From IMG/VR virus record IMGVR_UViG_3300042558_003926, positions 124,001 through 188,000 of that record: a stretch of DNA of 64,000 bases, one strand, 5' to 3'. The notes under the pieces are model-generated. The model worked only from the letters and a program-made list of their open reading frames with translations. It made no database searches and was not told where the DNA came from. Made by a program: the position numbers and the translations under genes. Of this stretch, positions 417 through 50,060 are shown piece after piece. Position 1 is the first letter of the stretch. Each line of letters opens with the position of its first letter.

Positions 417-896
417 ATGGCAAATATAGACAACCAATGTAAAGATCTTCTCGTTGAGAATGACTACGTAACGTCCACACACCACCTGGAGAAGTTGATG
501 TCCCTTCAGAAAAACACCCAAGAGAGGGTTTATGGTTACAAGTTTGATGACCTTACCCTCGGAGAAATTAAAGACTTTTGGCTTTGGAACACCAGAGCTA
601 TCGAAGACGAAATATCGGAGGCATATGATGCCTTAGGTGGAGTATCTAACAATGGCGAGACATCTATAGGCAACGCAGTATGGAAACCATGGAAAAGCAA
701 CCATAAGAAGGCTTATGAAATGAAAATATCGGATTTATCCGATGACGATGTAAAAGAATTAAAAATGGAGTTAGTAGACATTCAACATTTCATATTCAAC
801 ATGATGGCTTCCGTTGGCATGACCGCTGAGGAGCTTTATAATTATTACCTCTCCAAAAACAAGGAGAACATCAGAAGACAAGAAAACAATTATTAA
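417..896 (+). CDS. Dimeric all-alpha dUTPase/dCTPase (T4 gp56/MazG-like)
   Basis: EISEAYDAL, WKPWK, ELVDIQHF and C-terminal K-x2-EN-x2-RQ-x2-Y motifs. Confidence 0.8.
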   Translation: MANIDNQCKDLLVENDYVTSTHHLEKLMSLQKNTQERVYGYKFDDLTLGEIKDFWLWNTRAIEDEISEAYDALGGVSNNGETSIGNAVWKPWKSNHKKAYEMKISDLSDDDVKELKMELVDIQHFIFNMMASVGMTAEELYNYYLSKNKENIRRQENNY

Positions 897-1918: not shown

Positions 1919-4414
1919 ATGTTTGTAATAAAAAGAGACGGTTCTAAGGAACCCGTTAGGTTTGAAAAAGTTTCTAATAGAATTAAAAAAATGACTTATG
2001 GTCTAAATCCTGATCATATTGATTCTTTAGAGATTGCGCAAAAAGTTATTGCCGGAATCTACGATGGAATTTCTACACAGGAGTTAGACAATCTTGCAGC
2101 TGAAACTGCAGCATCGCTTATCCCAAATCACCCAGATTATTCAATATTAGCTTCAAGAATAGCAGTTTCTAGATTGCATAAGACAACTAAGAAGAAGTTT
2201 TCTGAAACGATAGAAGATCTTTATAGCTATATAGATCCTGAAACTAATACTCCAGCAGGTCTTATTAACGACGAGACATATAAGGTCGTTATGAAGAATA
2301 AACAGAAACTGGATGGAGCCATCATACACGAGAGGGACTTTAATTTCGAATATTTTGGATTCAAAACATTGGAGAAGAGTTATCTTTTAAAGACATATGG
2401 GGAGACAACGGAAACTCCTCAGCATATGTACATGCGAGTAGCAGTTGGTATATGGGGAGATAATCTGAAGAATGTAATTAAAACATACGAGTTACTTTCT
2501 AATCATTTAATGACCCACGCAACGCCAACATTATTTAATGCTGGAACAAAAAAACCACAGCTATCTTCTTGTTTTCTTTTAATGATGTCGGATGATTCTA
2601 TTCCCGGAATCTATAAGACGTTATCCGATGTTGCTGTTATCTCTCAGAATGCCGGAGGTATAGGACTTGCTATTCATAACGTTAGAAGTACGGGTTCTTA
2701 TATTAAAGGAACAAACGGAACTTCCAATGGAATTGTTCCTATGCTAAAAGTTTTCAACGAAACTGCAAGATATGTAGATCAAGGTGGAGGCAAAAGAAAA
2801 GGATCTTTTGCTATTTATGTAGAACCATGGCATGCTGACATTGAGTCTTTTCTAGATCTTAGAAAGAATACAGGGAAAGAAGAACTTAGAGCAAGAGATT
2901 TATTTTTGGCTTTATGGACCCCTGACTTATTTATGAAGAGGGTTAAAGAGAGCGGAGAATGGTCATTATTTTCTCCTTCTGATGTTCCTGGGCTTTGGGA
3001 ATTATACGGAGAGGATTTCGAGAAAGCTTATATCGATGCTGAACTTTCAGGAAAGGCTAGAAAGACAATAAAAGCCAGGGATTTATGGACAAAAATTATT
3101 GATTCACAAATCGAGACCGGAACTCCATATATGCTTTATAAGGATGCTGCTAACAAAAAATCAAATCAGCAAAATCTTGGTACAATAAAAAGTTCTAATC
3201 TTTGTACGGAGATCTTAGAATATACTTCTAAGGACGAGCAAGCTGTTTGTAACCTTGCATCTATCCCGGTAAATAAATTCTTAAAATCTACAGACAATAG
3301 GACTTCAAAGATAGCCAGAGGAAAATGTGAGGTTGATCATAAAGCCTTATATGATGTAGCTTACCAAACAGCTATCAACCTAAATAAGGTTATTGACGTT
3401 AACTATTACCCGACAAAAGAAACTGAGAGATCTAACATGAGACACCGTCCAATCGGTATCGGTATACAAGGTCTAGCAGATCTTTTTGCAATTATGGGTA
3501 TTCCTTTTACTTGTTTAGAGGCTAAGAAAATAAACGAGGAAGTATTTGAGACAATTTACTTTGCGTCAATGTCCGCTTCAATGGACTTAGCTAGAAGAGA
3601 CGGAAAATATGAAACATTTGACGGTTCACCACTTAGCAAAGGAGATTTCCAATTTAACCTTTGGGGATTCAAAGACGAACAACTTTCCGGAAGATGGGAT
3701 TGGGCTAAATTGAGAAAGGAAGTAATGAAACACGGAGCAAGAAACTCTTTGCTTTTAGCTCCAATGCCAACTGCTTCCACTGCACAAATAATGGGTAACA
3801 ACGAGGCTTTTGAACCTTTTACATCCAATATCTATACCAGAAGAACACTAAGTGGTGAGTTTATTCTTGTAAATAAACATCTAGTTAGGGATCTTATTTC
3901 TTTAGGTCTATGGAGCGATGATATGAAAAACATGATTATCCTACATAAGGGATCGGTTCAGAATATTCCACAAATACCAGAAGCTGTTAGAGAAACATAT
4001 AAAACTGTATGGGAAATAAAGCAGAAGGATCTAATAGATATGTCTGCTGGAAGAGGCAAATTTATTTGCCAATCACAATCACTAAATCTCTTTATAGAGA
4101 ATGTTAATGCTGCTAAATTAACTTCGGCACATTTCCATTCTTGGGAATTAGGACTAAAAACAGGAATGTACTACTTAAGGACTAAATCAGCGGTGGATGC
4201 AATTGCTGGTTTGGGTATAGACATGGAAAAGGCAAAGAAATCTTTGAAAACAACAGAGGAAAAAATTCCAACTCCAGTAAAAGAAAATACCGAGGAGAAG
4301 ATAGATATGCTTGGCATGACAAGCGAAGAACTAAGTAAGGCAGCAGAAAATATGATGTCTGATATAGTTTGTAGCTTAGACAATCCTGACGATTGTCTTG
4401 CTTGCGGATCATAA
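1919..4414 (+). CDS. nrdA: Class Ia ribonucleotide reductase alpha subunit
   Basis: ATP cone (VIKRDG), TPTLFNAGT, SSCF, NLCTE catalytic motif, C-terminal CxxC (CLAC). Confidence 0.97.
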   Translation: MFVIKRDGSKEPVRFEKVSNRIKKMTYGLNPDHIDSLEIAQKVIAGIYDGISTQELDNLAAETAASLIPNHPDYSILASRIAVSRLHKTTKKKFSETIEDLYSYIDPETNTPAGLINDETYKVVMKNKQKLDGAIIHERDFNFEYFGFKTLEKSYLLKTYGETTETPQHMYMRVAVGIWGDNLKNVIKTYELLSNHLMTHATPTLFNAGTKKPQLSSCFLLMMSDDSIPGIYKTLSDVAVISQNAGGIGLAIHNVRSTGSYIKGTNGTSNGIVPMLKVFNETARYVDQGGGKRKGSFAIYVEPWHADIESFLDLRKNTGKEELRARDLFLALWTPDLFMKRVKESGEWSLFSPSDVPGLWELYGEDFEKAYIDAELSGKARKTIKARDLWTKIIDSQIETGTPYMLYKDAANKKSNQQNLGTIKSSNLCTEILEYTSKDEQAVCNLASIPVNKFLKSTDNRTSKIARGKCEVDHKALYDVAYQTAINLNKVIDVNYYPTKETERSNMRHRPIGIGIQGLADLFAIMGIPFTCLEAKKINEEVFETIYFASMSASMDLARRDGKYETFDGSPLSKGDFQFNLWGFKDEQLSGRWDWAKLRKEVMKHGARNSLLLAPMPTASTAQIMGNNEAFEPFTSNIYTRRTLSGEFILVNKHLVRDLISLGLWSDDMKNMIILHKGSVQNIPQIPEAVRETYKTVWEIKQKDLIDMSAGRGKFICQSQSLNLFIENVNAAKLTSAHFHSWELGLKTGMYYLRTKSAVDAIAGLGIDMEKAKKSLKTTEEKIPTPVKENTEEKIDMLGMTSEELSKAAENMMSDIVCSLDNPDDCLACGS

Positions 4415-4425: not shown

Positions 4426-5052
4426 ATGGGACAAATAAAATACTTCGAACAATTTTTAAATGAGAGAGAACTTCCCGATAACCAAGGGGAAGTTCTCGTC
4501 ATTTTAGGGGCACCTGGATCAGGGAAGGGAACACTAGCAAAAGTTCTACAAGATGACTATGGAATCAATCATATATCCACTGGTGATCTAATTAGAAAGT
4601 CGGATGACGAGGAGCTTAAAAAAATAATAGCTGGTGGTGATCTTGTACCTGACTCAATGATAGTTAAAATGCTCGTTTCCGAACTAAAGAATATAGACCC
4701 TTTAGAGGGTGTTATTTTTGATGGATTCCCAAGGACAATTAAACAAGCTAAAAAGCTTGATTCTATTCTTGGCAAGATGGGGCTTGGGTTAAATCACGCG
4801 ATATTTCTTGATCTTGATGAAAAAATAGCCAAGGAAAGGATAAAAGAAAGAGCAAAGAAAGAGGATAGAAAGGATGATTCCAGCGATGAGGTTATAGAAA
4901 ACAGATTCAAAGAATATCACAATAAGACATTCCCTTTAGTTGACTTTTATAAGAGAAGTAGAAAACTTCTAAAAATAGATGCTGAGGGGGGAAAGGATAA
5001 AGTACTCTCTAAAGTTGTTGAAAAACTGGGACTTACTAAGAAGAAAAAGTAA
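4426..5052 (+). CDS. adk: Adenylate kinase with N-terminal leader peptide
   Basis: GAPGSGKGT P-loop, HISTGDLIR, DGFPRT, RKDD. Extra N-terminus MGQIKYFEQFLNE. Confidence 0.92.
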   Translation: MGQIKYFEQFLNERELPDNQGEVLVILGAPGSGKGTLAKVLQDDYGINHISTGDLIRKSDDEELKKIIAGGDLVPDSMIVKMLVSELKNIDPLEGVIFDGFPRTIKQAKKLDSILGKMGLGLNHAIFLDLDEKIAKERIKERAKKEDRKDDSSDEVIENRFKEYHNKTFPLVDFYKRSRKLLKIDAEGGKDKVLSKVVEKLGLTKKKK

Positions 5053-14079: not shown

Positions 14080-14844
14080 ATGAGACTTAGAATCACAAGT
14101 ACCGCAAACCTAATTACACTTTTGCGAAGATTGAAAACGGTAGAAAGGAGCGTTATCCTTGAATTAAAAAAGGATGGAATTTTTTGTAAAGTTCATACAC
14201 CGGATAAGTCGGTAATGAAATATTCTTCCGTTAAATTCGACGATATTCTAGAAGGAGAAATAGATTGGAAAAAAATTAAATGTGATCGTATAAAAATCGG
14301 GATAATTGATGTTACCCGTTTAATAGATGCCTTTAAACACTTCAGACCAGAGGAAGAGATCTTTATGGAGATTGAAACTGATAATTTGGAAGGATCTTGT
14401 GTTTCTACTGAGGTTAAATTAATTTCTGCTTCACTTAGCATTAGACTAAAATGTGCGGATCTTTCACTACTTTCTTATGTTGAGGATAATATATTAGATC
14501 TTGTTCATAGCAGGGAAGATGCTTTATTAAGATTTAAAATCTACCAATCTGACTTCACCACGATTACATCCCTATGTGGATTAGAAACAAACTCCGAGGA
14601 GATTTTATGCTTCAATGTGAAGGACACAAATGTTTATGCTATAGGGGATTCATTCAATTATAAGCTGAACATAGGATCTTCCGAGATAATTTTAGAAGAC
14701 GGTGAGAGTTCACCAAATATCTATAAAAAGGAATTATCTTACATGGAACCAGAAACTTGCGAGGTTTATGTTCATGACAACAGAATGGTTATGGTATCTG
14801 AACAATCTTCTACGTCTATAGCTATGGGATTAGTTGAAAAATAA
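14080..14844 (+). CDS. Putative sliding clamp (gp45/PCNA-like)
   Basis: About 250 aa with alternating beta/alpha pattern, overlapping the start of the PolB C-half. No diagnostic motif. Confidence 0.45.
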   Translation: MRLRITSTANLITLLRRLKTVERSVILELKKDGIFCKVHTPDKSVMKYSSVKFDDILEGEIDWKKIKCDRIKIGIIDVTRLIDAFKHFRPEEEIFMEIETDNLEGSCVSTEVKLISASLSIRLKCADLSLLSYVEDNILDLVHSREDALLRFKIYQSDFTTITSLCGLETNSEEILCFNVKDTNVYAIGDSFNYKLNIGSSEIILEDGESSPNIYKKELSYMEPETCEVYVHDNRMVMVSEQSSTSIAMGLVEK

Positions 14845-15997
14845 AAATATGACACAGGAAGAAATCCTAGAAATAAAACAAAAAATAGAGAGGCTTACTG
14901 AAGTTAAGAACGAACTTAAGAACGAGGAGCAGGCTATTAAATTAACAATGAACTCCATCTATGGAGCGATTGGTAATAACTGGTTTGTGTGTTTCAATCC
15001 TGATGTTGCTGAATCTGTAACCCTACAGGGACAGGACCTAATAAAGTATTCGGAGAAGATTCTCCATAAATACTTCCATGAGCACTGGCACCTAGATAAG
15101 GAGCTCCATGAAAAATTAGGGCTTACCGCCGTGAAGAAGGTTTCTAGACCCCTGGTTGTTTATGGTGATACTGATTCTAATTACGTGACGTTTCAGGAGG
15201 TGGTAGATTCATGTGACTATAAAGGAGACCCAAAGGATTTAATTCTTAAGATAAATGAATATAGACTGAATGATTATCTGAAGAAGTGTTTTGATATCTA
15301 CTCCAAAAAATGGAATACAGACAATTACCAGGACTTTGAGTTAGAGACACTTTCTTTTAACGCCATATTCTTAGGTAAGAAGAAATATGTTGCTAACCTG
15401 GCTTATGATTCAGGTATCCACACAGATCCTCTATCTCAGTTGAAGTTTACTGGAGTTGAGATGATTAAAGGAGGTACACCTCCATTTGTAAGAGAGAAGC
15501 TTGTTTATCTAACAAAATTCATTTTCTCAAAAGGTAGAAATTTTAATATCAGGGACTTTGTTAAGGAACTTAAGGATATAAAGAAGGAATTCAAAGTCCA
15601 GGAACCTAAAAACATATCAGCATCCGTAAATATTAACAATTACGAGAAATTCATTCTGAATGATACCACCGCTTTCGAAGTGGCAAAGGCTTGTCCAATC
15701 CACGTTAGAGCTTCTGGTTATCACAACTACCTTCTAAATTCGTCTAAATATAAGAGTAAATATTCCCTAATAAGAAGCGCTGAGAAGGTTAACTATTACT
15801 TTGTTAAAACAAAATCTATAGCTGACAATAATGTCTTTGCATATCCTCAGGGAACATTTCCCTATGAATTTGCTCCGCCTATAGATTATGATGAGCAGTT
15901 TACTAAGACTATTTTGGATCCTATAAATAGGTTTATTGAAGTTATGGGGTACAATAAAATAAGTCCTAACTTGTTTATGATTAACGCACTTTTTTAA
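14834..15997 (+). CDS. Family B DNA polymerase, C-terminal half
   Basis: KLTMNSIYG (motif B), YGDTDS (motif C), KKKY, C-terminal clamp-binding-like LF. Confidence 0.93.
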   Translation: MKNKNMTQEEILEIKQKIERLTEVKNELKNEEQAIKLTMNSIYGAIGNNWFVCFNPDVAESVTLQGQDLIKYSEKILHKYFHEHWHLDKELHEKLGLTAVKKVSRPLVVYGDTDSNYVTFQEVVDSCDYKGDPKDLILKINEYRLNDYLKKCFDIYSKKWNTDNYQDFELETLSFNAIFLGKKKYVANLAYDSGIHTDPLSQLKFTGVEMIKGGTPPFVREKLVYLTKFIFSKGRNFNIRDFVKELKDIKKEFKVQEPKNISASVNINNYEKFILNDTTAFEVAKACPIHVRASGYHNYLLNSSKYKSKYSLIRSAEKVNYYFVKTKSIADNNVFAYPQGTFPYEFAPPIDYDEQFTKTILDPINRFIEVMGYNKISPNLFMINALF

Positions 15998-16785: not shown

Positions 16786-18243
16786 ATGCCATCAAATAGA
16801 GTTCTCGATTTTTTCTCCTATATTAATGAGGCTAAGGTAGACACCACAAAAATAGTGGTTCTGACCGGTAACGTTAAGGGAAGTAAGACTTCATCGTCTT
16901 TTGAGAAAGAGTGTAAGAAAAGAAAAATAGAATGCTATATAGTAGACGTAAACGATGCTATTATAGAGAAAACATACAATGGACACACATTTAAGACGGG
17001 GGACAAGGAAATCCAAATAGACCCGAACTCTACTGTAATTGTACCAAGAAGAGGAGTTTTAGAAAACTCATACACTAAGCAGATCCTTTCATATCTGGAG
17101 GATTCCAGATATTTTACAGTAAACACTTTGGAATCTATGGAAGTGTGCGAGAATAAGTATTTAACTTCTCAGATATTGGAGGAGAGTGGTTTACCAGTTC
17201 CTAAATGTGCTTTAGTTCCCAATGAGGATTTTCTAGATTCCGCTCTAAAACAAATAGGTGGTAAATTCCCAGTAGTTATGAAGCTGCTTGCAGGAACTCA
17301 GGGAATAGGAGTTTCTATAGTTGATTCGTACTCTTCATTGAAATCTGTCTACCAAACCATCAGAAAGCTAGATGGAGATAATGAGATTTTAATCCAAGAA
17401 AAAATAGATTCCAACTTTGATCTTAGAATTCAAGTTATAATCAAGAAATTCGACCCTTTACAGCCAGATCCTGATAACTGCATTATCCTGGGATCGATGA
17501 AAAGACAGGCGGTTAAGAAAGACTTTAGAACCAACTATTCTTTAGGTGGATCTGTTTCGAAATACAACATATCTAAAGAAATAGAAGAAATTGCATGTAA
17601 AGCGGCAAATGCAGTAGGTTGCCATTGGTGTGGGGTTGATATTATGATAGATTCTAAAACTAAGAAGCCTTATATACTGGAAGTTAATTCCTCTCCTGGT
17701 ACGGAAGGAATATCGCAAGCAATCGGAAAGCCTATAGTTGATGACGTTATAAATTATCTTGTTGAAAAGAGCAACTGGTCTTATTCCAATTTAGAAATAG
17801 GATACTTAGAAACTATAGAGATACCAGGAATTGGTAATATAGTAGCTAAGTTTGATACCGGAAACGGAGCAAAATCATGCAGTATGCACTGTGATGAGGT
17901 TGAAGAGGTTGACGGTAAGCTAAAATGGAAAATCGGTAAGAAGAATTTTGTTAGCGATATCGTGGGATATTCGGATGCCGAAGTAGGTAGGGATATACAC
18001 ACTAGACCAATAATAGAGATGGACATAATGTTCCACGGTGTTCTGGTACCTGCAGTTAAGATTTCTCCAGTCGACAGGACAGAGAAAAGCACACCATTCT
18101 TAGCAAATAGAGGATTTATGAGAAGACTTGGTCTAATTGTTAATCCATATAAAGCCTTTGTGGTTTCAGAAGAACCTAAAGGAGGATATCAGGTTGGGGC
18201 TTCTAAGGGTAAATCCCACGCAGGAATTAAATTCGAAAAATAA
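16786..18243 (+). CDS. RimK-like ATP-grasp ligase fused to retropepsin-like (DTG) protease domain
   Basis: CENKYLT, GTQGIGV, IQEKI, FRTNYSLGG, GVDI, EVNSSPG. C-terminal AKFDTGNGA. Confidence 0.88.
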   Translation: MPSNRVLDFFSYINEAKVDTTKIVVLTGNVKGSKTSSSFEKECKKRKIECYIVDVNDAIIEKTYNGHTFKTGDKEIQIDPNSTVIVPRRGVLENSYTKQILSYLEDSRYFTVNTLESMEVCENKYLTSQILEESGLPVPKCALVPNEDFLDSALKQIGGKFPVVMKLLAGTQGIGVSIVDSYSSLKSVYQTIRKLDGDNEILIQEKIDSNFDLRIQVIIKKFDPLQPDPDNCIILGSMKRQAVKKDFRTNYSLGGSVSKYNISKEIEEIACKAANAVGCHWCGVDIMIDSKTKKPYILEVNSSPGTEGISQAIGKPIVDDVINYLVEKSNWSYSNLEIGYLETIEIPGIGNIVAKFDTGNGAKSCSMHCDEVEEVDGKLKWKIGKKNFVSDIVGYSDAEVGRDIHTRPIIEMDIMFHGVLVPAVKISPVDRTEKSTPFLANRGFMRRLGLIVNPYKAFVVSEEPKGGYQVGASKGKSHAGIKFEK

Positions 18244-18839: not shown

Positions 18840-20270
18840 ATGGATCTAGTTTCAGCTTTACAACAATCTAATACAACTACCGAGAATGGAATGGTAACAA
18901 ATTCTAGCTCTCTTGATAACTGCGTTGATATGTTTTTTAAAATCGGAGCTTTTAGATCTGCGGAAGAAGCTGATGTGATTAGAGTTTTTTCTCTTGCCTT
19001 TTCAGAGGATCCGGTTTCCGCTTTAAGAATTCTTTTCTGGGCTAGAGACATCAGAGGTGGTGCTGGAGAGAGAAGAGTTTTTAGAATATGCCTGGAATAT
19101 CTTTCCAAAGCTAATAGAGAGGCTATAGTTAGGAACATGCCTCTTATCTCTGAATATGGAAGATGGGATGATTTGCTTGTATTTTTCGGTACGGATCTTC
19201 AGGACGAGGCAGCAAAGTTAATTAAGGGTGCTCTGGATTCTGAGAATGGTCTTTGTGCTAAATGGATGCCTAGAAAGGGATTTGTTGCTAACGAGCTTAG
19301 AAAGTTCATGGGAATGACACCGAAGGATTATCGTAAGACCCTTGTTTCTCTTACTAATGTGGTTGAGCAGAATATGTGTTCCGGTAAATGGGAAGACATT
19401 AACTATTCGCAGGTTCCTTCTGTAGCTGCTGCCAGATACCAGAGAGCTTTCTATAAAAGAGACACAGAAAGGTATGCAGAATACATTAGACTCTTATCTC
19501 TTCCTGCAGAATCTAGACCGGAAGGAGTAAAGATAAATGCGCAAGCCGTTTATCCATACGATGTTCTAAAATCAATCAGAAAAGGTAACGAAGACGTAGC
19601 AACCGCCCAGTGGAACGAACTTCCCGATTATATGGAGGGAAGCTCAGATATGATATTACCTGTAGTGGACGTATCCGGATCTATGACAACCGGGATTTCT
19701 AGCGGATCATCTTTAACCTGTATGGATGTTGCAATTTCTCTTGGACTTTACATCTCCGAAAGAAATGTGGGGCCTTTCCAGGATCACTTCATCACATTTA
19801 GTGAAAGACCTGAACTCCAAAAACTAAAGGGTAATCTTTACGAGAGATATCACCAATTAGAATCTTCTGAGTGGGGGATGTCTACTAATTTAGAATCGGT
19901 GTTTGATTTAGTTTTGCGTCAGGCTATTAAACATAACGTGGGTAAAGAATCGATGCCAACTAAGATATTGATTCTTTCCGATATGGAATTCAACCAGGCC
20001 ATTCGTGGAGGAGAAAGCGTTTCAGCTATAGAGATGATCAGAGGAAAGTACGAGAAAGCTGGATATGATATGCCATCTATTATATTCTGGAACATTCAGA
20101 GTAGGAGTGGAGGAAATAATGTTCCGGTTAGATTCGATGAGTCGGGAACTGCTTTAATCTCCGGATTTTCGCCTTCCATTTTGAAATCGATACTCTCAGG
20201 GAATAACATTACTCCTATTGATATTATGCAAGAGACGATAAATTCGGAAAGATATAAAAATATATCATAA
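18840..20270 (+). CDS. TROVE-like/vWA protein (DUF2828-type)
   Basis: RDIRGGAGERRVF, YGRWDDL, AKWMPRKG. vWA MIDAS motif DVSGSM and ILSDMEF. Confidence 0.85.
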   Translation: MDLVSALQQSNTTTENGMVTNSSSLDNCVDMFFKIGAFRSAEEADVIRVFSLAFSEDPVSALRILFWARDIRGGAGERRVFRICLEYLSKANREAIVRNMPLISEYGRWDDLLVFFGTDLQDEAAKLIKGALDSENGLCAKWMPRKGFVANELRKFMGMTPKDYRKTLVSLTNVVEQNMCSGKWEDINYSQVPSVAAARYQRAFYKRDTERYAEYIRLLSLPAESRPEGVKINAQAVYPYDVLKSIRKGNEDVATAQWNELPDYMEGSSDMILPVVDVSGSMTTGISSGSSLTCMDVAISLGLYISERNVGPFQDHFITFSERPELQKLKGNLYERYHQLESSEWGMSTNLESVFDLVLRQAIKHNVGKESMPTKILILSDMEFNQAIRGGESVSAIEMIRGKYEKAGYDMPSIIFWNIQSRSGGNNVPVRFDESGTALISGFSPSILKSILSGNNITPIDIMQETINSERYKNIS

Positions 20271-25719: not shown

Positions 25720-26088
25720 ATGAGAATAGCTGTAATTGCACACGATAACAAGAAAGCTGATCTCGTTGCTTTTATTCTGAAGAGACTTGATTTTTTTAAA
25801 AAACACGAGATCGTAGCAACTGGGACCACAGGTAAGCATATAGAGCACGCCGGCATAGAGGTAACAAAAAAGCTTTCCGGTCCTAAAGGAGGAGATGCAC
25901 AGATAGCAGCGGAACTTGTTGAAGGTCGAATAGATGGGGTTCTTTTTTTCATTGATCCCTTAACATCTCATCCACATGAGGTTGACGTCCAGATGTTGCT
26001 AAGACTTTGTAATGTGTGGAATATTCCAATAGCAACAAACTATTCTACGGCTAAGCTTCTAGTAGAAGCTATAATTAAAGAGAAGTAA
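25720..26088 (+). CDS. mgsA: Methylglyoxal synthase
   Basis: IAHDNKK, ATGTTG, SGPKGGDAQI, DPL, PHEVDVQMLLRLC, PIATN. Confidence 0.95.
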   Translation: MRIAVIAHDNKKADLVAFILKRLDFFKKHEIVATGTTGKHIEHAGIEVTKKLSGPKGGDAQIAAELVEGRIDGVLFFIDPLTSHPHEVDVQMLLRLCNVWNIPIATNYSTAKLLVEAIIKEK

Positions 26089-26829: not shown

Positions 26830-27606
26830 ATGAGAACTTTCCAAAAACCATCCGATGCTATAAAATGGACTAAGGAGCGGTTGTCTGATTGTGGGTATGT
26901 AGTTAAAACGGAAAAATGGCAGGGTATAGAAGCACCCGACGATATGTTTGAGATTATGAACCATTCTTTCCAAATGTTTATCCCACATTCTTTGGAAGAA
27001 CTTATTGATGAGGTAAAACCGAATCTTGACTGGGCGGATGAGCACTTCTTTGAAAGAGTTGGGGGTCTTCCCCTTAATCCACCTCCTTCCCATGTTAACT
27101 GGCCATTTGCTCAAAAGAATAACGAGAAGTTTGGTGGGAATAGTAGATTTTCCCACACCTATCCGGAAAGGATATGGCCTAAATACGCATCAGAAGAACC
27201 CAATACCAAATTATCAGGAATACGTTTCGATTACGGAGATCTTGCTGATGTTGTTGATTTATTAGAGAAGGAGCCATTTACCAGACAGGCTTTTTTGCCC
27301 ATATGGTTTCCTGAGGATACCGGAGTAACCCACGGAGAAAGAGTACCGTGTACTATAGGGTATCATTTTATGCGGAGAGGAAATTGGTTCCATATAGCTT
27401 ACTTTATTAGATCATGTGATTATATAAGACACTTTAGAGATGACATATATCTAGCGATAAGAAAACTTATGTGGATATTAGATGAGCTTAAAAAGAGAAA
27501 TCCGGATACATGGAACGATGTTGTTCCTGGGTATTTTTCTATGCACATAATATCTTTGCATTGCTTTAATAGCGAGAAGGGATTATTAAAATTAAGTAAT
27601 AAGTAG
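26830..27606 (+). CDS. Divergent thymidylate-synthase-fold enzyme (candidate dCMP-modifying)
   Basis: TRQA, catalytic PC, RSCDYIRHFRDD where canonical ThyA has RSxDxxxGxxFN. Confidence 0.75.
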   Translation: MRTFQKPSDAIKWTKERLSDCGYVVKTEKWQGIEAPDDMFEIMNHSFQMFIPHSLEELIDEVKPNLDWADEHFFERVGGLPLNPPPSHVNWPFAQKNNEKFGGNSRFSHTYPERIWPKYASEEPNTKLSGIRFDYGDLADVVDLLEKEPFTRQAFLPIWFPEDTGVTHGERVPCTIGYHFMRRGNWFHIAYFIRSCDYIRHFRDDIYLAIRKLMWILDELKKRNPDTWNDVVPGYFSMHIISLHCFNSEKGLLKLSNK

Positions 27607-32871: not shown

Positions 32872-33942
32872 ATGAATAAAACTAAATTCGATTTCGATGA
32901 TATCCTGATTCAACCTTCTATAGTTAGCGATATATCTTCTCGTAGTGAGGTTACCGTTACATATAATGATGGGTACCTCCCTCTATTTACTGCTCCTATG
33001 GATACTGTAGTTAGCGAGAATAATATTGAACTTTTTCAGGCTAAAGGGATAAGAGTTGTGAAGCCAAGAACCCTGAATACACCATACAGTGGTTATGGAA
33101 CGGATTTCAATGAATTCATTTCTCTTGGTTTAGACGAATTCATTAAAATTTATCTAGGTAAAAAAAAGAATGAATATGATGACCAGATGTTTATTCTCAT
33201 CGACATTGCAAATGGGCATATGAGAAAGCTTATTGATTCTGTTAAGAAAGCTAAAGAAACATACGGTGATTCTTTAATTCTCATGGTGGGTAATATAGCC
33301 AATCCTAAGACATACTCCGATCTTTCCGAAGCAGGAGCTGATTTTGTAAGAGTTGGGATAGGAAACGGCGGAGGTTGCTTAACGACGGTTCAAACTGGAG
33401 TTGGCTATCCTATGGCATCTTTAATTAAAGAATGTTACATCGAAAGCTGTTTGATGAATACCCCCGCGAAGATTGTTGCTGATGGCGGATTTAAAAGCTA
33501 TTCTGATATTATAAAAGCTCTTGGACTAGGAGCAGATTATGTTATGCTTGGTTCAATATTGAATAAAGCTTTGGAGAGCGCAGGTGACACATACTTAGCT
33601 AATACTAAAGGTGAGGGATGGACTGAGCCGGGTGAAAGGATCAATCAATATGCTGCTGAGACAGAGAATCTGTTCAAGTACGGTACTAAGATGTTTAAGA
33701 AGTTTAGAGGGATGAGTACCAAGGAGGCTCAGAAGGCTATGGGTAAGACAGAGTTGAAAACTAGCGAAGGAGTTAGTCGAATGCAACCAGTAGAATACAC
33801 ATTAGAAGGATGGACTGAAAACTTTAGAAGCTACCTTTCCTCCGCAATGAGCTATTCCGATGCAGCCGATCTTAAGAGCTTTATAGGTCTTGCTAAGTTC
33901 AACTACGTAACTCCAAATTCTTTAAACAGATATAAAAAATGA
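32872..33942 (+). CDS. IMPDH/GMP-reductase family protein
   Basis: FDFDDILI, APMDTV, IDIANGH, VGNIAN, VGIGNGGGCLT, ADGG, GADYVMLGS, FRGMS, SEG. Confidence 0.88.
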   Translation: MNKTKFDFDDILIQPSIVSDISSRSEVTVTYNDGYLPLFTAPMDTVVSENNIELFQAKGIRVVKPRTLNTPYSGYGTDFNEFISLGLDEFIKIYLGKKKNEYDDQMFILIDIANGHMRKLIDSVKKAKETYGDSLILMVGNIANPKTYSDLSEAGADFVRVGIGNGGGCLTTVQTGVGYPMASLIKECYIESCLMNTPAKIVADGGFKSYSDIIKALGLGADYVMLGSILNKALESAGDTYLANTKGEGWTEPGERINQYAAETENLFKYGTKMFKKFRGMSTKEAQKAMGKTELKTSEGVSRMQPVEYTLEGWTENFRSYLSSAMSYSDAADLKSFIGLAKFNYVTPNSLNRYKK

Positions 33943-35786: not shown

Positions 35787-37724
35787 GTGAAAGTATTTTT
35801 TATTGTACCACATTTGTCTACCGGAGGAATGCCGGAATACCTAAAGAACAAGATAGAAAAAATTAAGGACTCCTGCGATATCTGGGTTTTAGAAAAATCA
35901 CATGAGAGAACTTATAATACCATCCGAAAAAGAATAGAATCATTAATAGGCGAGGATCGAATTGTAACATGGGGGGTTAAGAAAAAGATGATTCTTGACA
36001 TGATAGAATCTATCAAGCCCGATGTAATACATTTCGAAGAACCCTGTGAACACTTCCTATCGGATGACATTCTGATGAGGATATTCAGTAAGGATAGAAA
36101 TTACAGAATTATAGAGACTTTCCACGACTCGTCAATGGAAGCAGAGGAGAAAAGATTTCTCCCAGATAAATTTATTGTAGTTAGCCCTTGGCAAGTAAAG
36201 TTACTCCAGAAATTAAAAGTACCAATGGAAGTTATAGAACATAAATTAGAAGAGAAACCAGTTAGAGATAGTTCTCTTGCTAAAAAGAAACTTGGAATGG
36301 ATCCATCTAGGAAACACATTGTCCAGGTAGGAATATTCACCCCAAGAAAAAACCAATCAGAAACAATCAATATAGCCAGAATCCTTCCGGATTGTGATTT
36401 CTATTTAATAGGAACTTTGGCTGATAATTTTAAATGGTACTGGACTCCACTCATGGAAAATTTACCTTCAAATTGTAAAGTCCTGGGGGAAAGAGACGAC
36501 GTAGATCTTTTTTACGAAGCCGCTGATCTTATTATATTCCCATCGGTAGAGAACTTTAATGATAAGGAAACAAGTCCATTAGTTCTTAAAGAAGCAACTT
36601 CTTGGAAAGCACCTCTTCTTATGAAAAATACACCGGTCTACTCTGACATGTATCAGGAATCTGATCGGATTCATTTTATGGGAGATTCTATTAACTATAA
36701 TGCAAATAAAATTTTAAAAATATTCGGAAATATGGAAAACACGGCTCAGAAATTTTTTGCCAGATTTGAATCAGAAGAAAACAAGATAATAATAAATCTG
36801 ATGGAGAATAATGTTGGTGATGTTAATGTGTCAATTAAAGATCGTGATTCAAACACCTGCGTATACTCATTTTCTCTAAATGCAGATCACTCTGGATCCG
36901 AATGGTGGACTATTCCGATTCCTAAACCATACTTTGATTTTCAGGAAGATCGTAACTTTAGCGGGTTTCTTATTGAATTTTACAGCTCACAGACTGGCGA
37001 AATTATACAATCGATAACGATTGATCTTGGTAAAAAACCAATCATGAAGAAAAGAATAGTTGCTAATGGACCAATTAATTTTGATCCTATATTTGTTAAC
37101 TATACGCAGTTCTTTGTAGATGGAATATACAACCAGTTTTTTGCTGGATCTAGAATCAGCACAGCTATAGACATCGGAGCTAACGTTGGACTTTTCACTG
37201 AATGGGTTTTGGATAGGTTTGGTAGTGATACAAGAGTAATTTCGGTAGAGCCTAACTCTAAGGCTTGTTTATCTTTTGAGTCCATGCACTCCGGAAAAGA
37301 AAATGTTACATTGGATAAGCTGGCGGTAACATCCACAGATGGTGAAACTATTAGACTCATGGTAAATCCAGAAAACACCCTGATATCTAGTGTAGAGGGA
37401 ACCGGCGATGGTTATTCTGAATTCGAAGAAGTTGGAACAATATCTCTCATTGGACTTATGAAGAAATACGATCTTGAGGAAGTAGATCTTTTAAAAGTTG
37501 ATGTCGAGGGAGCTGAGTATGATATATTTAGTTCTGTTGAAGAGAATGATCTTAGAAGATTTAAACATCTTCTGATAGAATTTCACAATAATCAGGGAAG
37601 AGCTTCTTCTCTTATTTCTAAGATAGTTTCGGCTGGGTTTGAAATAGATCTTAGAGACGATGATACCAGATACGCAGTGGATCAAAATAACGACAGAGGA
37701 ACAATATTTGCTACAAGGAAATGA
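35787..37724 (+). CDS. GT4 glycosyltransferase fused to FkbM-family methyltransferase
   Basis: HLSTGGMPE, RKNQ, E(x7)E region. C-terminal IDIGANVG, VEP, LKVDVEGAEY. Confidence 0.88.
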   Translation: MKVFFIVPHLSTGGMPEYLKNKIEKIKDSCDIWVLEKSHERTYNTIRKRIESLIGEDRIVTWGVKKKMILDMIESIKPDVIHFEEPCEHFLSDDILMRIFSKDRNYRIIETFHDSSMEAEEKRFLPDKFIVVSPWQVKLLQKLKVPMEVIEHKLEEKPVRDSSLAKKKLGMDPSRKHIVQVGIFTPRKNQSETINIARILPDCDFYLIGTLADNFKWYWTPLMENLPSNCKVLGERDDVDLFYEAADLIIFPSVENFNDKETSPLVLKEATSWKAPLLMKNTPVYSDMYQESDRIHFMGDSINYNANKILKIFGNMENTAQKFFARFESEENKIIINLMENNVGDVNVSIKDRDSNTCVYSFSLNADHSGSEWWTIPIPKPYFDFQEDRNFSGFLIEFYSSQTGEIIQSITIDLGKKPIMKKRIVANGPINFDPIFVNYTQFFVDGIYNQFFAGSRISTAIDIGANVGLFTEWVLDRFGSDTRVISVEPNSKACLSFESMHSGKENVTLDKLAVTSTDGETIRLMVNPENTLISSVEGTGDGYSEFEEVGTISLIGLMKKYDLEEVDLLKVDVEGAEYDIFSSVEENDLRRFKHLLIEFHNNQGRASSLISKIVSAGFEIDLRDDDTRYAVDQNNDRGTIFATRK

Positions 37725-40036
37725 GAATAGCACAAATAACTCCAGGTGTAATTCCAATCCCTCCAAATGGATGGGGTGCGGTCGAGAAAATAATATGGGA
37801 ATACACGAAGGTGCTGAGATCTTTGGGCCACGAGGTAGAAATACTTTATGCTAATGAGGTAAACCTGGATGATTGGGATATCGTTCATGTGCATATGGCT
37901 AACCTTGCCTTGAACCTAAAAGAAAGAGGAATACCCTACGTCTTTTCCCACCACGATCACCACGCATATCATTTTGGAAAGGATTCCCACGTTTATAAGG
38001 AAAATCTTGAAGCTATAGAGGGATCTGTCGTTTCGTTTGTCCATGCTAAATACCTAGTTGAATATTTTGGCGGTGGAGATAAGATAAGGTATCTAAGCCA
38101 CGGAGTTAATATTAGGGATTACCAGTTTTCTGATAGAACCCAGGAGGTTAGATCTGGGAAATTCTCTTTGCTAATGTTGGCAAATAACGGGTTAGGTGGA
38201 GATAAGTTATACGATCGGAAGGGATTCAGATACGGTATAGAATCTGCTAGAAAGTTGGATCTCCCAATAACCATAATATGCCCCGGGACAAATTCAGATC
38301 TAATTAACTCCATAGATCCATACGAAAATCTGACGGTTAAATATGATCTGGATTATGCAGACACACTGAATGAAATTAGGAATCATCACATTTTTCTAAA
38401 TCCTTCTATGTTGGAAGCTGGACACCCAAATTTAACTGTTACGGAGATGGTAGCACTGGGAATACCGGTGGTCGGAACATCCGAATCAGAAATGCTGGGA
38501 TTGAAAAGAATAGAGCTGGGAAGCGATTTGAAAATTGATGAATCTAGTCTAGTTTCTAGTATTTATGAGGTGATGAGCAAATACCCCCAAATGGTTTTGG
38601 AATGCAAACAGGCTCGCGAATCCATATCATGGGAGGTCATAGTTTCCAAAATGCTAATGGATTATGCAAACTATTCTAAAATAGATCAAAGGGAGCTAAT
38701 TTTAAGCTCATATAGAGCTCCTATCAGGAAAGACTTATTATCCGATGGGAAAGGCTTCGATTGTTCGTTTAGCGGCTCTATTTATGCTTACAAGTCCATA
38801 AATACACCATCCATTGTCTCGGTTTTGTTTAAAGACAGGAGAACCAATAGAATAATTCACAGGAATAATTTCGCTAAAAGCTCTAAGTCCTGGGTAATGT
38901 ATGCGGATTCGCCAGATATTTTTATTGATTGGGAGGTTATATTTAAGTTAGGCGACAGAGTTCTTTTTAGTAAAAATGCAGATCTGAATAACAACCACGT
39001 TCTCGTTTATGGAAATCTGGACCACGGTCATTCCGAAATCCTCAGAAAATTTGAGGAAAGTACCGGATGTGTGATATCTATTTCTGATTCAGGGATACCA
39101 GGATTCTTTAAATGCGATGGGTCTTACGATCTCTATTACAGAAAATTAAATATTAATCAGATCCTAGATTATTTTATGTCACCAAAGCAGATCCAGGATA
39201 GAACTCTAATTAAGTTAGAGACAGGATCGCTAGGAGATAATATTGCTTTTGTTCCCTATGCTAATGAATACGGTAGAATTAGAGGTAGTGTAGTTGATGT
39301 TATGATGGCACATAAATCTCTCTTTCTAAAGGAATATGAGTGGATAAACTTCGTAGAATCGGATAGCCTATATGATTATACCAACTATATTGCGGTTGAT
39401 TATATTTTCGAAAAGCCCCTGCAGGAGGGGGTAGCCTACCAGCTAAATCTAGGATACGAAGAAATAAGACCCAAAATAAGGAGGAGGGATTCGAAAAACA
39501 CACCCAAGGGGAAATACGTTTGTTTTTCTATGCACAGTACAGCACAGGCTAAACACTGGAACTATCCGAAGGGATGGGAAAAATTGTGCAATGAATTAAA
39601 GATAAGGGGGCTAGAACCAGTCTGTATAGACAGATATGAATCATTTGGGACCGAAGGAAACTGGAATCATGTTCCTCCAAATTGCACTAATATGACGGGA
39701 GGAGATCTGGAAAGAATGAGAGAGATAATTAGCGGATGTGAATTTTTCATTGGCCTTTCTAGCGGTCTATCCTGGTTAGCTCATGCTCTAGGAAAAAGAG
39801 TTGTTATGATATCAGGAGTAACCTTACCCGAGAATGAATTTACAATCGACTGTTTAAGAATACATTCGGAATCATCTTGCAATTCTTGCTTCAATAAAAC
39901 CACAGATTATGAGTTTGATGCGGGGGATTGGATGTGGTGTCCGGAGTTCAGAGGGACTGAGAGACAGTTTGAATGTACTAGAAGTATCTCTCATTTATCC
40001 ATATTATCAAGGATAAAGGAAATTGGATGGATTTAA
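37721..40036 (+). CDS. GT4 domain fused to autotransporter-heptosyltransferase (TibC/Aah)-like domain
   Basis: IPPNGWGAVE. C-terminal LGDNIAF, AQAKHWNY, FIGLSSGLSWLAH and Cys cluster CNSC...WCP...FEC. Confidence 0.8.
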   Translation: MRIAQITPGVIPIPPNGWGAVEKIIWEYTKVLRSLGHEVEILYANEVNLDDWDIVHVHMANLALNLKERGIPYVFSHHDHHAYHFGKDSHVYKENLEAIEGSVVSFVHAKYLVEYFGGGDKIRYLSHGVNIRDYQFSDRTQEVRSGKFSLLMLANNGLGGDKLYDRKGFRYGIESARKLDLPITIICPGTNSDLINSIDPYENLTVKYDLDYADTLNEIRNHHIFLNPSMLEAGHPNLTVTEMVALGIPVVGTSESEMLGLKRIELGSDLKIDESSLVSSIYEVMSKYPQMVLECKQARESISWEVIVSKMLMDYANYSKIDQRELILSSYRAPIRKDLLSDGKGFDCSFSGSIYAYKSINTPSIVSVLFKDRRTNRIIHRNNFAKSSKSWVMYADSPDIFIDWEVIFKLGDRVLFSKNADLNNNHVLVYGNLDHGHSEILRKFEESTGCVISISDSGIPGFFKCDGSYDLYYRKLNINQILDYFMSPKQIQDRTLIKLETGSLGDNIAFVPYANEYGRIRGSVVDVMMAHKSLFLKEYEWINFVESDSLYDYTNYIAVDYIFEKPLQEGVAYQLNLGYEEIRPKIRRRDSKNTPKGKYVCFSMHSTAQAKHWNYPKGWEKLCNELKIRGLEPVCIDRYESFGTEGNWNHVPPNCTNMTGGDLERMREIISGCEFFIGLSSGLSWLAHALGKRVVMISGVTLPENEFTIDCLRIHSESSCNSCFNKTTDYEFDAGDWMWCPEFRGTERQFECTRSISHLSILSRIKEIGWI

Positions 40037-49834: not shown

Positions 49835-50050
49835 ATGGAAACTAAAGGAAAAAATTATTCGTTGTCGTTTGAATTGAATGACAAGCAGCAAAAAAAGTAT
49901 GATGGGTGGAAATCACACATTAAAGCATTATATGGGGAGTATGGATCATTCACTTGGACAATAACCCCTACAGGAATTGGTTTAGGAATTTCCGTTTTTA
50001 GCGAACTTGCAAAAGTTGAATTAGATTTAACCGACGTTGATAGCTGGTAA
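49835..50050 (+). CDS. Hypothetical protein
   Basis: 71-aa ORF with TPTGIG motif. Confidence 0.55.
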   Translation: METKGKNYSLSFELNDKQQKKYDGWKSHIKALYGEYGSFTWTITPTGIGLGISVFSELAKVELDLTDVDSW

Positions 50051-50060
50051 AAATAAAAGT

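What the first reader, a model, noticed from the sequence alone, without database searches (positions are those of the whole stretch)
26830..27606. Second TS-fold enzyme with Asp at the base-specificity position: likely cytosine modification
Seen: the canonical ThyA (50061) has RSQDVPLGTPFN, while this paralog has RSCDYIRHFRDD and keeps the catalytic PC. Known: Asn at this position selects dUMP and Asp selects dCMP, as in T4 gp42 dCMP hydroxymethylase, and T4-like phages pair it with a dCTPase (compare 417-896). The Gly-to-His change is atypical. Inference: a non-standard dC modification, possibly extended by one of the glycosyltransferases.
Basis: partly seen in the sequence, partly recalled or inferred. 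Interest (0 to 1): 0.65.

Follow-up and report, generated by a model that had tools for sequence, protein, structure and literature searches.

The report
Virus-only thymidylate-synthase-like cytosine enzyme
A freshwater jumbo phage carries, besides a normal thymidylate synthase, a second very divergent enzyme of the same fold whose active site is built for cytosine rather than uracil nucleotides. It belongs to a large, virus-only, untested family that databases call "thymidylate synthase", so these phages may make a modified cytosine for their DNA.

Summary
ORF 26830-27606 (+, 258 aa) has the motif RSCDYIRHFRDD and a Pro-Cys nucleophile. The canonical ThyA at 50061-51179 has RSQDVPLGTPFN.

The fold is a full thymidylate-synthase (TS) core (AF2 pLDDT 93.5; Z about 20 to all TS-fold structures), but Pfam TS scores only 15.9 bits, below its cut-off. 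The protein belongs to a distinct family of 583 clusters at 50% identity. That family is essentially absent from cellular genomes.

In 57 diverse members Cys174, Arg194 and Asp205 are invariant. Asp205 aligns with the cytosine-selecting Asp of T4 dCMP hydroxymethylase, MilA, the phage dCMP hydroxylase AfhB and the Xp12 dCMP methylase.

The phage also encodes a 39%-identical homologue of T4 gp56 dCTPase, an NMP kinase and a dCMP deaminase. Four of four complete jumbo relatives keep both ThyA and this gene.

My best reading is a dCMP C5-modifying enzyme. Hydroxymethyl is more likely than methyl because the C-terminal lid is missing and Thr replaces His147. The product, and whether it reaches the DNA, are untested. 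The glycosyltransferase link is unsupported.

In small siphophages, including Muddy, the family sits in a conserved cassette: kinase, MazG, a second TS-like protein, this gene, deaminase, PolA.

The parts
26830..27606 (+). TS-fold enzyme of a distinct virus-only clade ('T family'), 258 aa. Key residues in E. coli ThyA numbering: Cys174 (=C146), Arg171 (=L143), Thr175 (=H147), RSCD 194-197 (=R166-D169), His201 (=G173), Asp205 (=N177), His244 (=H207), Tyr111 (=Y94), Arg152 (=R126). Only 14 residues follow His244.
417..896 (+). Homologue of T4 gp56 dCTPase/dUTPase (all-alpha MazG/dUTPase_2 type). It could supply dCMP and remove dCTP.
   Evidence: 39% identity over 142 aa to T4 gp56, E 1e-28; phmmer 7.6e-27; phrog_173 and PF08761
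4426..5052 (+). Adenylate/UMP-CMP kinase family NMP kinase. It is the only NMP kinase found in this genome and the candidate for phosphorylating the modified dCMP (inferred).
   Evidence: PF00406 132.8 bits; NCBIfam adk and UMP-CMP kinase family hits below equivalog cut-offs; no PF02223 and no T4 gp1 homologue in the genome
50061..51179 (+). Canonical thymidylate synthase ThyA with Asn at position 177, His at 147 and a full C-terminus. It carries an insert of roughly 100 aa.
   Evidence: PF00303 300.7 bits; TIGR03284 299 bits
26090..26782 (+). Calcineurin-like metallophosphoesterase immediately upstream. The adjacency is kept only in the closer jumbo relatives. Its role is unknown; a nucleotidase is a guess.
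   Evidence: PF00149 51.1 bits; adjacency (12 of 64 non-redundant loci)
25720..26088 (+). Methylglyoxal synthase (MgsA) two genes upstream. There is no evident functional link to the TS-like gene.
   Evidence: NF003559 165.6 bits against a cut-off of 84; TIGR00160 158.1 against 146.9

Best explanation
The gene encodes an active pyrimidine-C5-modifying enzyme of the thymidylate-synthase superfamily that works on a cytosine mononucleotide, most likely dCMP, and not on dUMP. Proposed mechanism (inferred from the fold and residues): Cys174 attacks C6 of the base. Arg194, Ser195 and Arg152 hold the 5'-phosphate. His244 contacts the sugar. Asp205 reads N3 and the N4-amino group of cytosine. Asp197 and Tyr111 serve the one-carbon transfer from methylene-tetrahydrofolate. 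The protein stops at the equivalent of E. coli residue ~221, so it lacks the C-terminal lid that canonical TS needs for hydride transfer. It also has Thr/Ser in place of His147, as T4 dCMP hydroxymethylase, MilA and AfhB do. I therefore favour release of 5-hydroxymethyl-dCMP over 5-methyl-dCMP. In the cell it would work as in T4: the gp56-like dCTPase (417-896) makes dCMP and removes dCTP; this enzyme modifies dCMP; an NMP kinase (candidate 4426-5052) raises it toward the triphosphate; the dCMP deaminase (genome 19647-20213) and the canonical ThyA (50061-51179) keep dTTP synthesis going. Shown here: the fold, the residue conservation, the residue equivalences, the gene inventory, and the family's restriction to viruses. 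Inferred: the substrate, the cofactor, the product, and incorporation into DNA.
For: The fold is a TS core, with Z 20.3 to AfhB, 20.2 to MilA and 19.6 to E. coli TS. The Foldseek top hits are MilA and AfhB. The profile-to-PDB ranking is MilA 7e-10, AfhB 1e-8, L. casei TS N229D mutant 4.5e-8, T4 dCH 5e-6, E. coli TS 8e-5. Asp205 is invariant in 57 of 57 members and aligns with the Asp of MilA, AfhB, Xp12 TS and T4 D179. The family motif F-R-[DN]-D mirrors T4 gp42's F-R-N-D. N177D is known to switch TS to dCMP, and both D177 and position 147 associate with C-modified phage contigs (PMC8670742; PMC13326640). Cys174, Arg194, His244 and Tyr111 are invariant; Asp197 is Asp in 56 of 57. The median tail after the conserved His is 17 aa, against 57 in E. 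coli ThyA and about 63 in Xp12 TS; the model spans only E. coli residues 1-221. A gp56 homologue is present and so is a dCMP deaminase. Four of four complete jumbo relatives keep both canonical ThyA and this gene, which argues for a non-redundant role. The family is virus-restricted, with only 12 MAG contigs among 185,579 species genomes. Distant members sit in the cassette MazG/PRA-PH, TS-like, dCMP deaminase, PolA. That is the same domain set reported to mark cytosine-modified contigs (bioRxiv 10.1101/2024.12.05.627091; PMC8670742).
Against: No biochemical or DNA-composition data exist for any member. Position 143 is an invariant Arg. It is neither the Asp/Glu of known hydroxymethylases and hydroxylases nor the Leu of TS, so the published product rule does not apply. 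The equivalents of R127 (Gln) and R21 are not conserved, and Y209 is Phe, so nucleotide binding differs from all solved relatives. No homologue of the T4 gp1 dNMP kinase or of beta-glucosyltransferase was found. The genome under-represents several C-containing palindromes: ATGCAT 9 observed against 45.6 expected, CGCG at 0.5 of expectation, GGATCC at 0.69. A fully C-protected genome would not be expected to need that. gp56 homologues also occur in phages with canonical C (PMC13390438). In small phages the cassette can equally be read as ordinary dTMP synthesis (kinase, dUTPase, TS, dCMP deaminase), as published annotations do (PMC10353413).
Confidence: 0.5

Rival explanations
1. It is a dCMP methyltransferase that makes 5-methyl-dCMP, as the Xp12 enzyme does. 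The product either replaces C in DNA or, after deamination by the phage deaminase, serves as a dUMP-free route to thymidylate.
For: The family profile scores highest against the Xp12 5mdCMP synthase among the four references tested locally (41.9 bits). In small phages the gene is directly followed by a dCMP-deaminase-family gene and sits near a thymidylate-kinase-family kinase. That is the arrangement described for 5mC phages with 5mC-selective deaminases, where 5 of 7 neighbouring N177D enzymes made 5mdCMP (bioRxiv 10.1101/2024.12.05.627091).
Against: The protein lacks the C-terminal ~40 residues that methyl-forming TS enzymes, Xp12's included, retain. No DHFR is present in this genome or in the six cassettes inspected, whereas Xp12 has one beside its TS. 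Position 147 is Thr/Ser, as in the non-methylating cytosine enzymes, whereas Xp12 has Pro. In this jumbo phage a canonical ThyA already supplies dTMP.
Confidence: 0.15
2. It is simply a very divergent thymidylate synthase or dUMP hydroxymethylase acting on dUMP, as databases annotate it. The Asp is a lineage quirk.
For: It is annotated 'thymidylate synthase' in 100+ phage records. In five small phages it is the only PF00303-detectable gene. There it is flanked by a 'dUTPase', a thymidylate kinase and a dCMP deaminase, a set that fits classical dTTP synthesis (PMC10353413). RSCD and the Tyr94 equivalent are retained.
Against: Asp at position 177 is invariant in 57 of 57 members, and every characterised TS-fold enzyme with Asp there uses cytosine nucleotides (PMC13326640). 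Gln165, His147 and the C-terminal lid of TS are all missing. Four of four complete jumbo genomes keep a canonical ThyA alongside it. The clade is absent from cellular genomes, which is odd for a housekeeping dTMP synthase.
Confidence: 0.15
3. It carries out different chemistry at C5 of cytosine, with another cofactor or another substituent. Examples would be flavin-dependent hydroxylation as in AfhB/RB69 gp48, or a group not yet described.
For: The closest structures by Z and by identity are the flavin enzyme AfhB (Z 20.3, 18% identity) and MilA. It has the same truncated C-terminus as AfhB. Many family-specific invariant polar residues have no TS counterpart: Trp30, Glu75, Arg76, Asn83, Glu113, Arg114, Arg171, His201.
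Against: The published signature of 5-hydroxy-dCMP synthases, Asn at position 169, is not met: Asp in 56 of 57 (PMC13326640). Asp169 is the folate-contacting residue of TS. Nothing here indicates another cofactor.
Confidence: 0.13
4. It is a non-catalytic or non-nucleotide TS-fold protein, for example a regulatory subunit, an RNA-binding protein or a decoy.
For: TS proteins can bind their own mRNA. In small phages the gene is paired with a second degenerate TS-fold protein, which would allow a structural or regulatory partnership.
Against: The nucleophile, the phosphate-binding Arg residues, the sugar-binding His and the base-reading Asp are strictly conserved across members that are 31-52% identical to the query. 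Inteins sit in the catalytic region in some members, which is typical of essential enzymes.
Confidence: 0.05

Closest known systems
T4 gp42 deoxycytidylate 5-hydroxymethyltransferase (PDB 1b5e/1b49)
   Same: TS fold (Foldseek TM 0.67). Both have a Cys nucleophile, the R-S-x-D motif and Asp at the base-reading position inside an F-R-[ND]-D motif. Both have Thr at position 147 and a short C-terminus without the TS lid. Both occur in a T4-related genome that also has gp56, a dCMP deaminase and a separate ThyA.
   Different: Identity is only about 14% and the profile E-value is 5e-6, so they are not orthologous. Position 143 is Arg, not Asp. Gly173 is replaced by His. The N-terminal half has its own invariant residues. 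No gp1 kinase or alpha/beta-glucosyltransferase homologues were found.
MilA CMP 5-hydroxymethylase (PDB 5jnh/5b6d)
   Same: Best sequence-profile hit (7e-10) and best Foldseek hit (3e-13, TM 0.70). Both have Asp at position 177, Thr at 147, and Arg three residues after the R-x-x-D motif.
   Different: MilA is a bacterial antibiotic-pathway enzyme acting on the ribonucleotide. It has a ~100-aa C-terminal extension and Asp at position 143. Identity is 16%.
AfhB / RB69 gp48-type 5-hydroxy-dCMP synthases (PDB 9iqc/9iqu; PMC13326640)
   Same: Highest structural Z (20.3) and identity (18%). Same truncated C-terminus, Asp at 177 and Thr at 147. Phage-encoded.
   Different: Their diagnostic Asn at position 169 is absent here (Asp). 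They use a flavin and O2, not folate. Position 143 is Glu.
Xanthomonas phage Xp12 5-methyl-dCMP synthase
   Same: Asp at position 177. Neighboured by a dCMP-deaminase-family gene, as the distant T-family members are. Best local profile score (41.9 bits).
   Different: Xp12's enzyme is a regular PF00303 member (138 bits, against 15.9 here). It keeps the C-terminal segment, has Pro at position 147, and has a DHFR next door.
Canonical ThyA (E. coli; window 50061-51179)
   Same: Same fold (Z 19.6). The P-C nucleophile, RSCD motif, and Tyr94 and His207 equivalents are shared.
   Different: The differences are Asn177 to Asp, His147 to Thr, Leu143 to Arg, Gln165 to Ile, Gly173 to His, and Arg127 to Gln. 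Residues 222-264 are missing. The Pfam score is below the gathering cut-off. The clade is not found in cellular genomes.

Membership tests
Thymidylate synthase ThyA (PF00303, EC 2.1.1.45) | Scores above the Pfam gathering cut-off (24.3 bits) | tested here: not met
   15.9 bits, E 0.0076, with only residues 136-198 matched. Other family members score 16-38 bits.
Thymidylate synthase ThyA (PF00303, EC 2.1.1.45) | TS alpha/beta fold with a Pro-Cys nucleophile and the R-S-x-D phosphate/folate motif | tested here: met
   Z 19-20 to TS structures. Cys174, Arg194 and Ser195 are conserved and Asp197 is Asp in 56 of 57.
Thymidylate synthase ThyA (PF00303, EC 2.1.1.45) | Asn177 (uracil-selecting) together with His147 and Gln165 | tested here: not met
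   Asp in 57 of 57; Ser/Thr in 57 of 57; Ile/Met/Leu at position 165.
Thymidylate synthase ThyA (PF00303, EC 2.1.1.45) | C-terminal segment (E. coli 222-264) that closes over the folate for hydride transfer | tested here: not met
   The model aligns to E. coli residues 1-221 only. 14 residues follow His244; the family median is 17.
T4 gp42-type dCMP hydroxymethylase | Asp179 and Cys148 equivalents | tested here: met
   The profile alignment places the family Asp on D179 and the Cys on C148.
T4 gp42-type dCMP hydroxymethylase | Acidic residue at the E. coli-143 position (rule in PMC13326640) | tested here: not met
   Arg171 is invariant in 57 of 57.
T4 gp42-type dCMP hydroxymethylase | Converts dCMP and CH2-THF to 5hmdCMP | not testable with these tools
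   Needs an enzyme assay or LC-MS.
5-hydroxy-dCMP synthase (AfhB / RB69 gp48) | Asn at the E. coli-169 position | tested here: not met
   Asp197 is Asp in 56 of 57 and Glu in 1. The signature is from PMC13326640.
Xp12-type 5-methyl-dCMP synthase | A regular PF00303 member with Asp177 and a retained C-terminus | tested here: not met
   Xp12 TS scores 138.4 bits on PF00303 and has about 60 residues after the conserved His. Here the score is 15.9 bits and 14 residues follow the His. Only the Asp is shared.
MetaGPA-type cytosine-modification module (TS-N177D + PRA-PH/MazG + dCMP deaminase + PolA) | These genes lie within a few kb of the TS homologue | tested here: inconclusive
   Met in distant family members: Muddy, P744, Opt-155, PMBT14, Zuko, and L092-L100. 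Not met in this jumbo phage or its close relatives, where the dCTPase, deaminase and TS-like gene are 26 kb and 131 kb apart and the polymerase is family B.

The most novel reading that the evidence does not exclude
The T family installs a C5 substituent on cytosine that has not been described, or uses a cofactor other than those known. The basis would be its unique invariant active-site residues: Arg at position 143, His at 173, and Glu75, Arg76, Asn83, Glu113 and Arg114. If so, an abundant lineage of freshwater T4-related jumbo phages, and many isolated siphophages now annotated as having a 'thymidylate synthase' (Mycobacterium phage Muddy, Gordonia, Serratia, Pseudomonas and Streptomyces phages), would carry a new modified cytosine. 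In the small phages it would be made with the help of a second, degenerate TS-fold partner.
Probability: 0.13. Interest if true: 0.85.

Novelty: new variant of a known kind. Interest (0 to 1): 0.6.

Why it matters
TS-superfamily enzymes are the entry point of nearly all known phage pyrimidine hypermodifications. Each newly characterised clade has so far revealed a new base: 5hmC, 5hmU, 5mC, and recently 5-hydroxy-C. This clade is large (583 clusters at 50% identity), virus-only, untested, and uniformly annotated as plain thymidylate synthase. It occurs in cultivable phages, including Muddy, a phage I know from therapeutic use (my own knowledge, not checked here). The prediction is therefore cheap to test. 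If it is right, it would change how those genomes are read with respect to restriction and CRISPR evasion, sequencing bias and engineering. It would also add a new specificity signature (Arg143 / His173 / Asp177) to the TS toolbox.

Tried and rejected
1. A direct sequence search of P0001 against PDB gave only E 0.4-1. A family profile was needed.
2. NCBIfam gave no specific family: archaeal TS at 24.9 bits against a cut-off of 174.
3. ESM Atlas returned only 'thymidylate synthase family protein' clusters.
4. The literature searches found no paper that tests this clade. The AfhB paper is not in the library.
5. Sequencing runs: 20 lake-water metagenomes hold the stretch, but all are kept as contigs and none is RNA. 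Read laying could show neither modification nor expression and was not used.
6. I looked for the small-phage partner 'X' in the jumbo genome by BLAST, phmmer and HMM and found none.
7. The hhalign comparison of X with T was only weakly significant (E 0.073). The TS-fold assignment of X rests on the AF2 model (pLDDT 82) having almost only TS-fold chains among its top 50 Foldseek rows, at weak E-values of 0.01-0.08, and on its Cys / R-[ST] / Asp motif.
8. The conserved neighbours of T in the large-phage subclade are small unknown ORFs and replication genes (RecA-like, DnaB-like). They give no modification clue.
9. Long family members are intein or LAGLIDADG insertions, not informative fusions.
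10. I considered and rejected 5-hydroxy-dCMP synthase membership (D169N signature absent) and gp42 orthology.
11. I did not build a phylogeny against gp42, td, SPO1 gp29 and the rest. At 9-18% identity it would not fix function, and I lacked referenced sequences for several of them.

Full report
**1. The observation**

ORF 26830-27606 on the + strand is open, starts with ATG and encodes 258 aa, stored as P0001. It contains VPC (Cys174) and RSCDYIRHFRDD at residues 194-205. The second TS gene, with ATG at 50061 and stop at 51179, has PPCH and RSQDVPLGTPFN. It is a regular ThyA at 300.7 bits on PF00303 and 299 bits on TIGR03284.

**2. The genome**

- The window is bases 124001-188000 of a 289,651-bp IMG/VR virus record that CheckV rates complete.
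- GC content is about 36%.
- The stretch is held by 20 lake-water metagenome runs.
- It has no close isolate relative. There are only weak DNA matches, to Maribacter phage Panino and to an uncultured 462-kb phage.
- It is distantly T4-related. It has homologues of gp56, gp43 (in two ORFs), gp44, gp4, gp3 and gp61 and a Gp23-type capsid domain.

**3. What the protein is**

- Pfam TS scores only 15.9 bits against a cut-off of 24.3. PHROG 160 'thymidylate synthase' gives 4e-24.
- An exhaustive HMMER search of 1.84 billion cluster representatives finds 583 clusters at E<=1e-3 and 144 at E<=1e-30.
- The word search finds 4031 proteins, nearly all unnamed.
- An AF2 model built on 57 diverse members is confident: pLDDT 93.5, pTM 0.92.
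- VIA-align gives Z 19-20 to every TS-fold structure. These are ties: AfhB 20.3, MilA 20.2, Mtb ThyA 19.7, E. coli TS 19.6.
- Sequence identity is highest to the cytosine enzymes, at 16-18% against 9-13% for the others.
- Foldseek ranks MilA and AfhB first.
- The family profile against PDB ranks MilA 7e-10, AfhB 1e-8, L. casei TS N229D mutant 4.5e-8, T4 dCMP hydroxymethylase 5e-6 and E. coli TS 8e-5.

So it is a complete TS-core fold, but a clade of its own, roughly equidistant from all characterised branches.

**4. Active-site reading**

Residue equivalences come from the HMMER and BLAST alignments. Numbering in brackets is E. coli ThyA.

Retained residues:

| Residue here | E. coli equivalent | Conservation in 57 members |
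|---|---|---|
| Cys174 | C146 | 57/57 |
| Arg194 | R166 | 57/57 |
| Ser195 | S167 | 55/57 |
| Asp197 | D169 | 56/57 |
| Tyr111 | Y94 | 57/57 |
| Arg152 | R126 | 56/57 |
| His244 | H207 | 57/57 |

Changed residues:

| E. coli residue | Residue in this family | Conservation |
|---|---|---|
| N177 | Asp205 | 57/57 |
| H147 | Ser/Thr | 57/57 |
| L143 | Arg171 | 57/57 |
| G173 | His201 | 52/57 |
| Q165 | Ile/Met/Leu | 56/57 |
| R127 | Gln | 54/57 |
| Y209 | Phe | 50/57 |

- Asp205 aligns with the Asp of MilA, AfhB, the Xp12 5mdCMP synthase and T4 D179, and with the engineered Asp of L. casei N229D.
- The family motif F-R-[DN]-D resembles T4 gp42's F-R-N-D.
- The role of position 177 in choosing dUMP or dCMP is established knowledge (Hardy & Nalivaika 1992; Liu & Santi 1992; Graves et al. 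1992). Those papers are cited in PMC8670742 and PMC13326640, which also link position 147 and Asp177 to C-modified phage DNA.
- The D169N signature of 5-hydroxy-dCMP synthases (PMC13326640) is absent.
- The protein ends at the equivalent of E. coli residue ~221. The median tail after the conserved His is 17 aa, against 57 in E. coli ThyA, about 63 in Xp12 TS, 30 in T4 gp42 and 12 in AfhB.
- In TS the C-terminus closes the folate site for hydride transfer (established TS enzymology, from my own knowledge). Together with Thr147, its absence is my reason to prefer a hydroxymethyl product over a methyl one. This step is inference.

**5. Genomic evidence in this phage**

- ORF 417-896 is 39% identical to T4 gp56 dCTPase/dUTPase, E 1e-28.
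- An ADK/UMP-CMP-family NMP kinase lies at 4426-5052.
- A dCMP-deaminase-family gene lies at genome 19647-20213.
- RNR genes lie at 916-4414.
- No DHFR, C5 DNA methyltransferase, thymidylate kinase, gp1 or beta-glucosyltransferase homologue was found.
- Four of four complete jumbo relatives (270-434 kb, 74-76% identical T protein) keep both a canonical ThyA and the T gene. This argues for distinct functions.
- In the closer relatives the gene stays next to a metallophosphoesterase, and often next to a methylglyoxal synthase. The adjacency fades in more distant large phages.

**6. Evidence from distant family members**

- In isolated siphophages the T gene (39-46% identical) sits in a conserved cassette. 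These are Mycobacterium Muddy, Yersinia P744, Serratia Opt-155, Pseudomonas PMBT14, Streptomyces Zuko and Brevundimonas Strzyga, together with many Gordonia records.
- The cassette order is: thymidylate-kinase-family kinase, MazG/dUTPase_2 pyrophosphatase, unknown protein X, T, dCMP deaminase, PolA, Cas4-like nuclease. IMG/VR loci L092-L100 show the same order.
- In five such genomes T is the only PF00303-detectable gene.
- X is itself a degenerate TS-fold protein. It has a conserved Cys, an R-[ST] motif and an Asp eight residues after the position that corresponds to TS Asp169. Its AF2 model (pLDDT 82) has TS-fold chains in 49 of its 50 listed Foldseek rows, AfhB first, though at weak E-values of 0.01-0.08.
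- The jumbo phage has no X.
- The domain set TS(N177D) + PRA-PH + dCMP deaminase + PolA is what two MetaGPA studies found enriched in experimentally selected cytosine-modified contigs. The neighbouring TS homologues that were tested made 5mdCMP in 5 of 7 cases (PMC8670742; bioRxiv 10.1101/2024.12.05.627091). I could not establish whether any tested enzyme belongs to this clade.
- Published phage announcements read the cassette as 'thymine synthesis' (PMC10353413).

**7. Distribution**

Among one genome for each of 185,579 prokaryote species, only 12 loci were found. All are on MAG contigs, and one is a Saprospirales bin at 67% identity. The clade is in effect viral. Some members carry inteins or LAGLIDADG inserts in the catalytic region.

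**8. Evidence against full replacement of C in this phage**

- Several C-containing palindromes are under-represented: ATGCAT 9 observed against 45.6 expected (z -5.4), CGCG at 0.50 of expectation, GCGC at 0.67, GGATCC at 0.69, GAGCTC at 0.57. This hints at continuing restriction pressure, though the evidence is weak.
- gp56 homologues are also found in Krischvirus, where one isolate has canonical C (PMC13390438).
- The glycosyltransferases in the window are one GT2, one GT1 fused to an FkbM methyltransferase, and one GT9/GT4. None is close to the gene. I give the 'extended by a glycosyltransferase' idea no support.

**9. Verdict**

- The core inference, a cytosine-directed second TS-fold enzyme working with a dCTPase, is the best-supported reading. 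I give about 0.5 to my best reading, a folate-dependent dCMP C5 one-carbon enzyme, and about 0.8 to any cytosine-nucleotide substrate (the cytosine-directed readings together). The specific 5hmdCMP product gets about 0.3.
- It is not proven.
- The protein is not a member of ThyA proper, of gp42-type hydroxymethylases, of 5-hydroxy-dCMP synthases or of Xp12-type methylases by their defining features. It is a new, large, virus-only variant within the TS superfamily.

No alternative genetic code was used. 

Noticed in passing
window 25720-26088 (+): A phage-encoded, apparently genuine methylglyoxal synthase. MgsA equivalog models score above their cut-offs: 165.6 against 84, and 158.1 against 146.9. 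It is kept next to the metallophosphoesterase and the TS-like gene in close jumbo relatives. This is an unusual auxiliary metabolic gene and its role is unknown.
   Followed up: partly
window 417-896 (+): A clear homologue of T4 gp56 dCTPase/dUTPase (39% identity, E 1e-28) directly upstream of the RNR genes. 1400 phage records hold homologues, almost all of them Straboviridae.
   Followed up: yes
genome 122918-124324 (ends at window base 324) and window 14834-15997 (+): The T4 gp43-like family-B DNA polymerase is encoded as two ORFs about 14.5 kb apart. The dCTPase, RNR, kinase, GT2, topoisomerase II, UvdE and DnaJ genes lie between them.
   Followed up: no
L002:5045-5938, L003:5214-6047, L004:5192-6001, L006:4153-4941, L007:3889-4950, L008:4138-4977, L016:1558-2292: In small siphophages the T gene is preceded by, and often overlaps, a second and far more divergent TS-fold protein 'X'. 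X has its own conserved Cys, an R-[ST] motif and an Asp at the base-reading register. The two may form a heterodimer or carry out consecutive steps. X is absent from the jumbo phage.
   Followed up: partly
P0122, P0144, P0162, P0221, P0255 (family members elsewhere): Some T-family genes carry inteins or LAGLIDADG endonuclease inserts. In P0122 the Hint domain starts at residue 174, the catalytic Cys position.
   Followed up: partly
whole genome G000: ATGCAT is five-fold under-represented (9 observed, 45.6 expected). CGCG, GCGC, GGATCC and GAGCTC are also low. This suggests restriction pressure on C-containing sites.
   Followed up: partly
window 50037-51179 (+): The canonical ThyA is 372-380 aa and has an insert of roughly 100 aa relative to the Pfam model. 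The ORF caller's TTG start at 50037 is probably wrong; the ATG at 50061 fits the family N-terminus.
   Followed up: no
window 53923-54780, 16786-18243, 18840-20270, 32872-33942: Other unusual cargo: a Thg1-like tRNA-His guanylyltransferase, a RimK-like ATP-grasp ligase, a DUF2828/DUF7788 protein, and an IMPDH/GMP-reductase-like protein.
   Followed up: no
window 35787-37724 and 37721-40036 (+): Two large glycosyltransferase genes, one GT1 fused to an FkbM methyltransferase and one GT9 plus GT4. Relative L012 has the same pair. There is nothing to show that they act on DNA.
   Followed up: partly
L014:1284-5524: In one metagenomic T-family contig the gene sits beside an asparagine-synthase-like amidotransferase, a PRA-PH pyrophosphatase, a C5 DNA methyltransferase and an N4/N6 methyltransferase. 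A C5 DNA methyltransferase next to T is hard to square with complete replacement of C in that phage.
   Followed up: no
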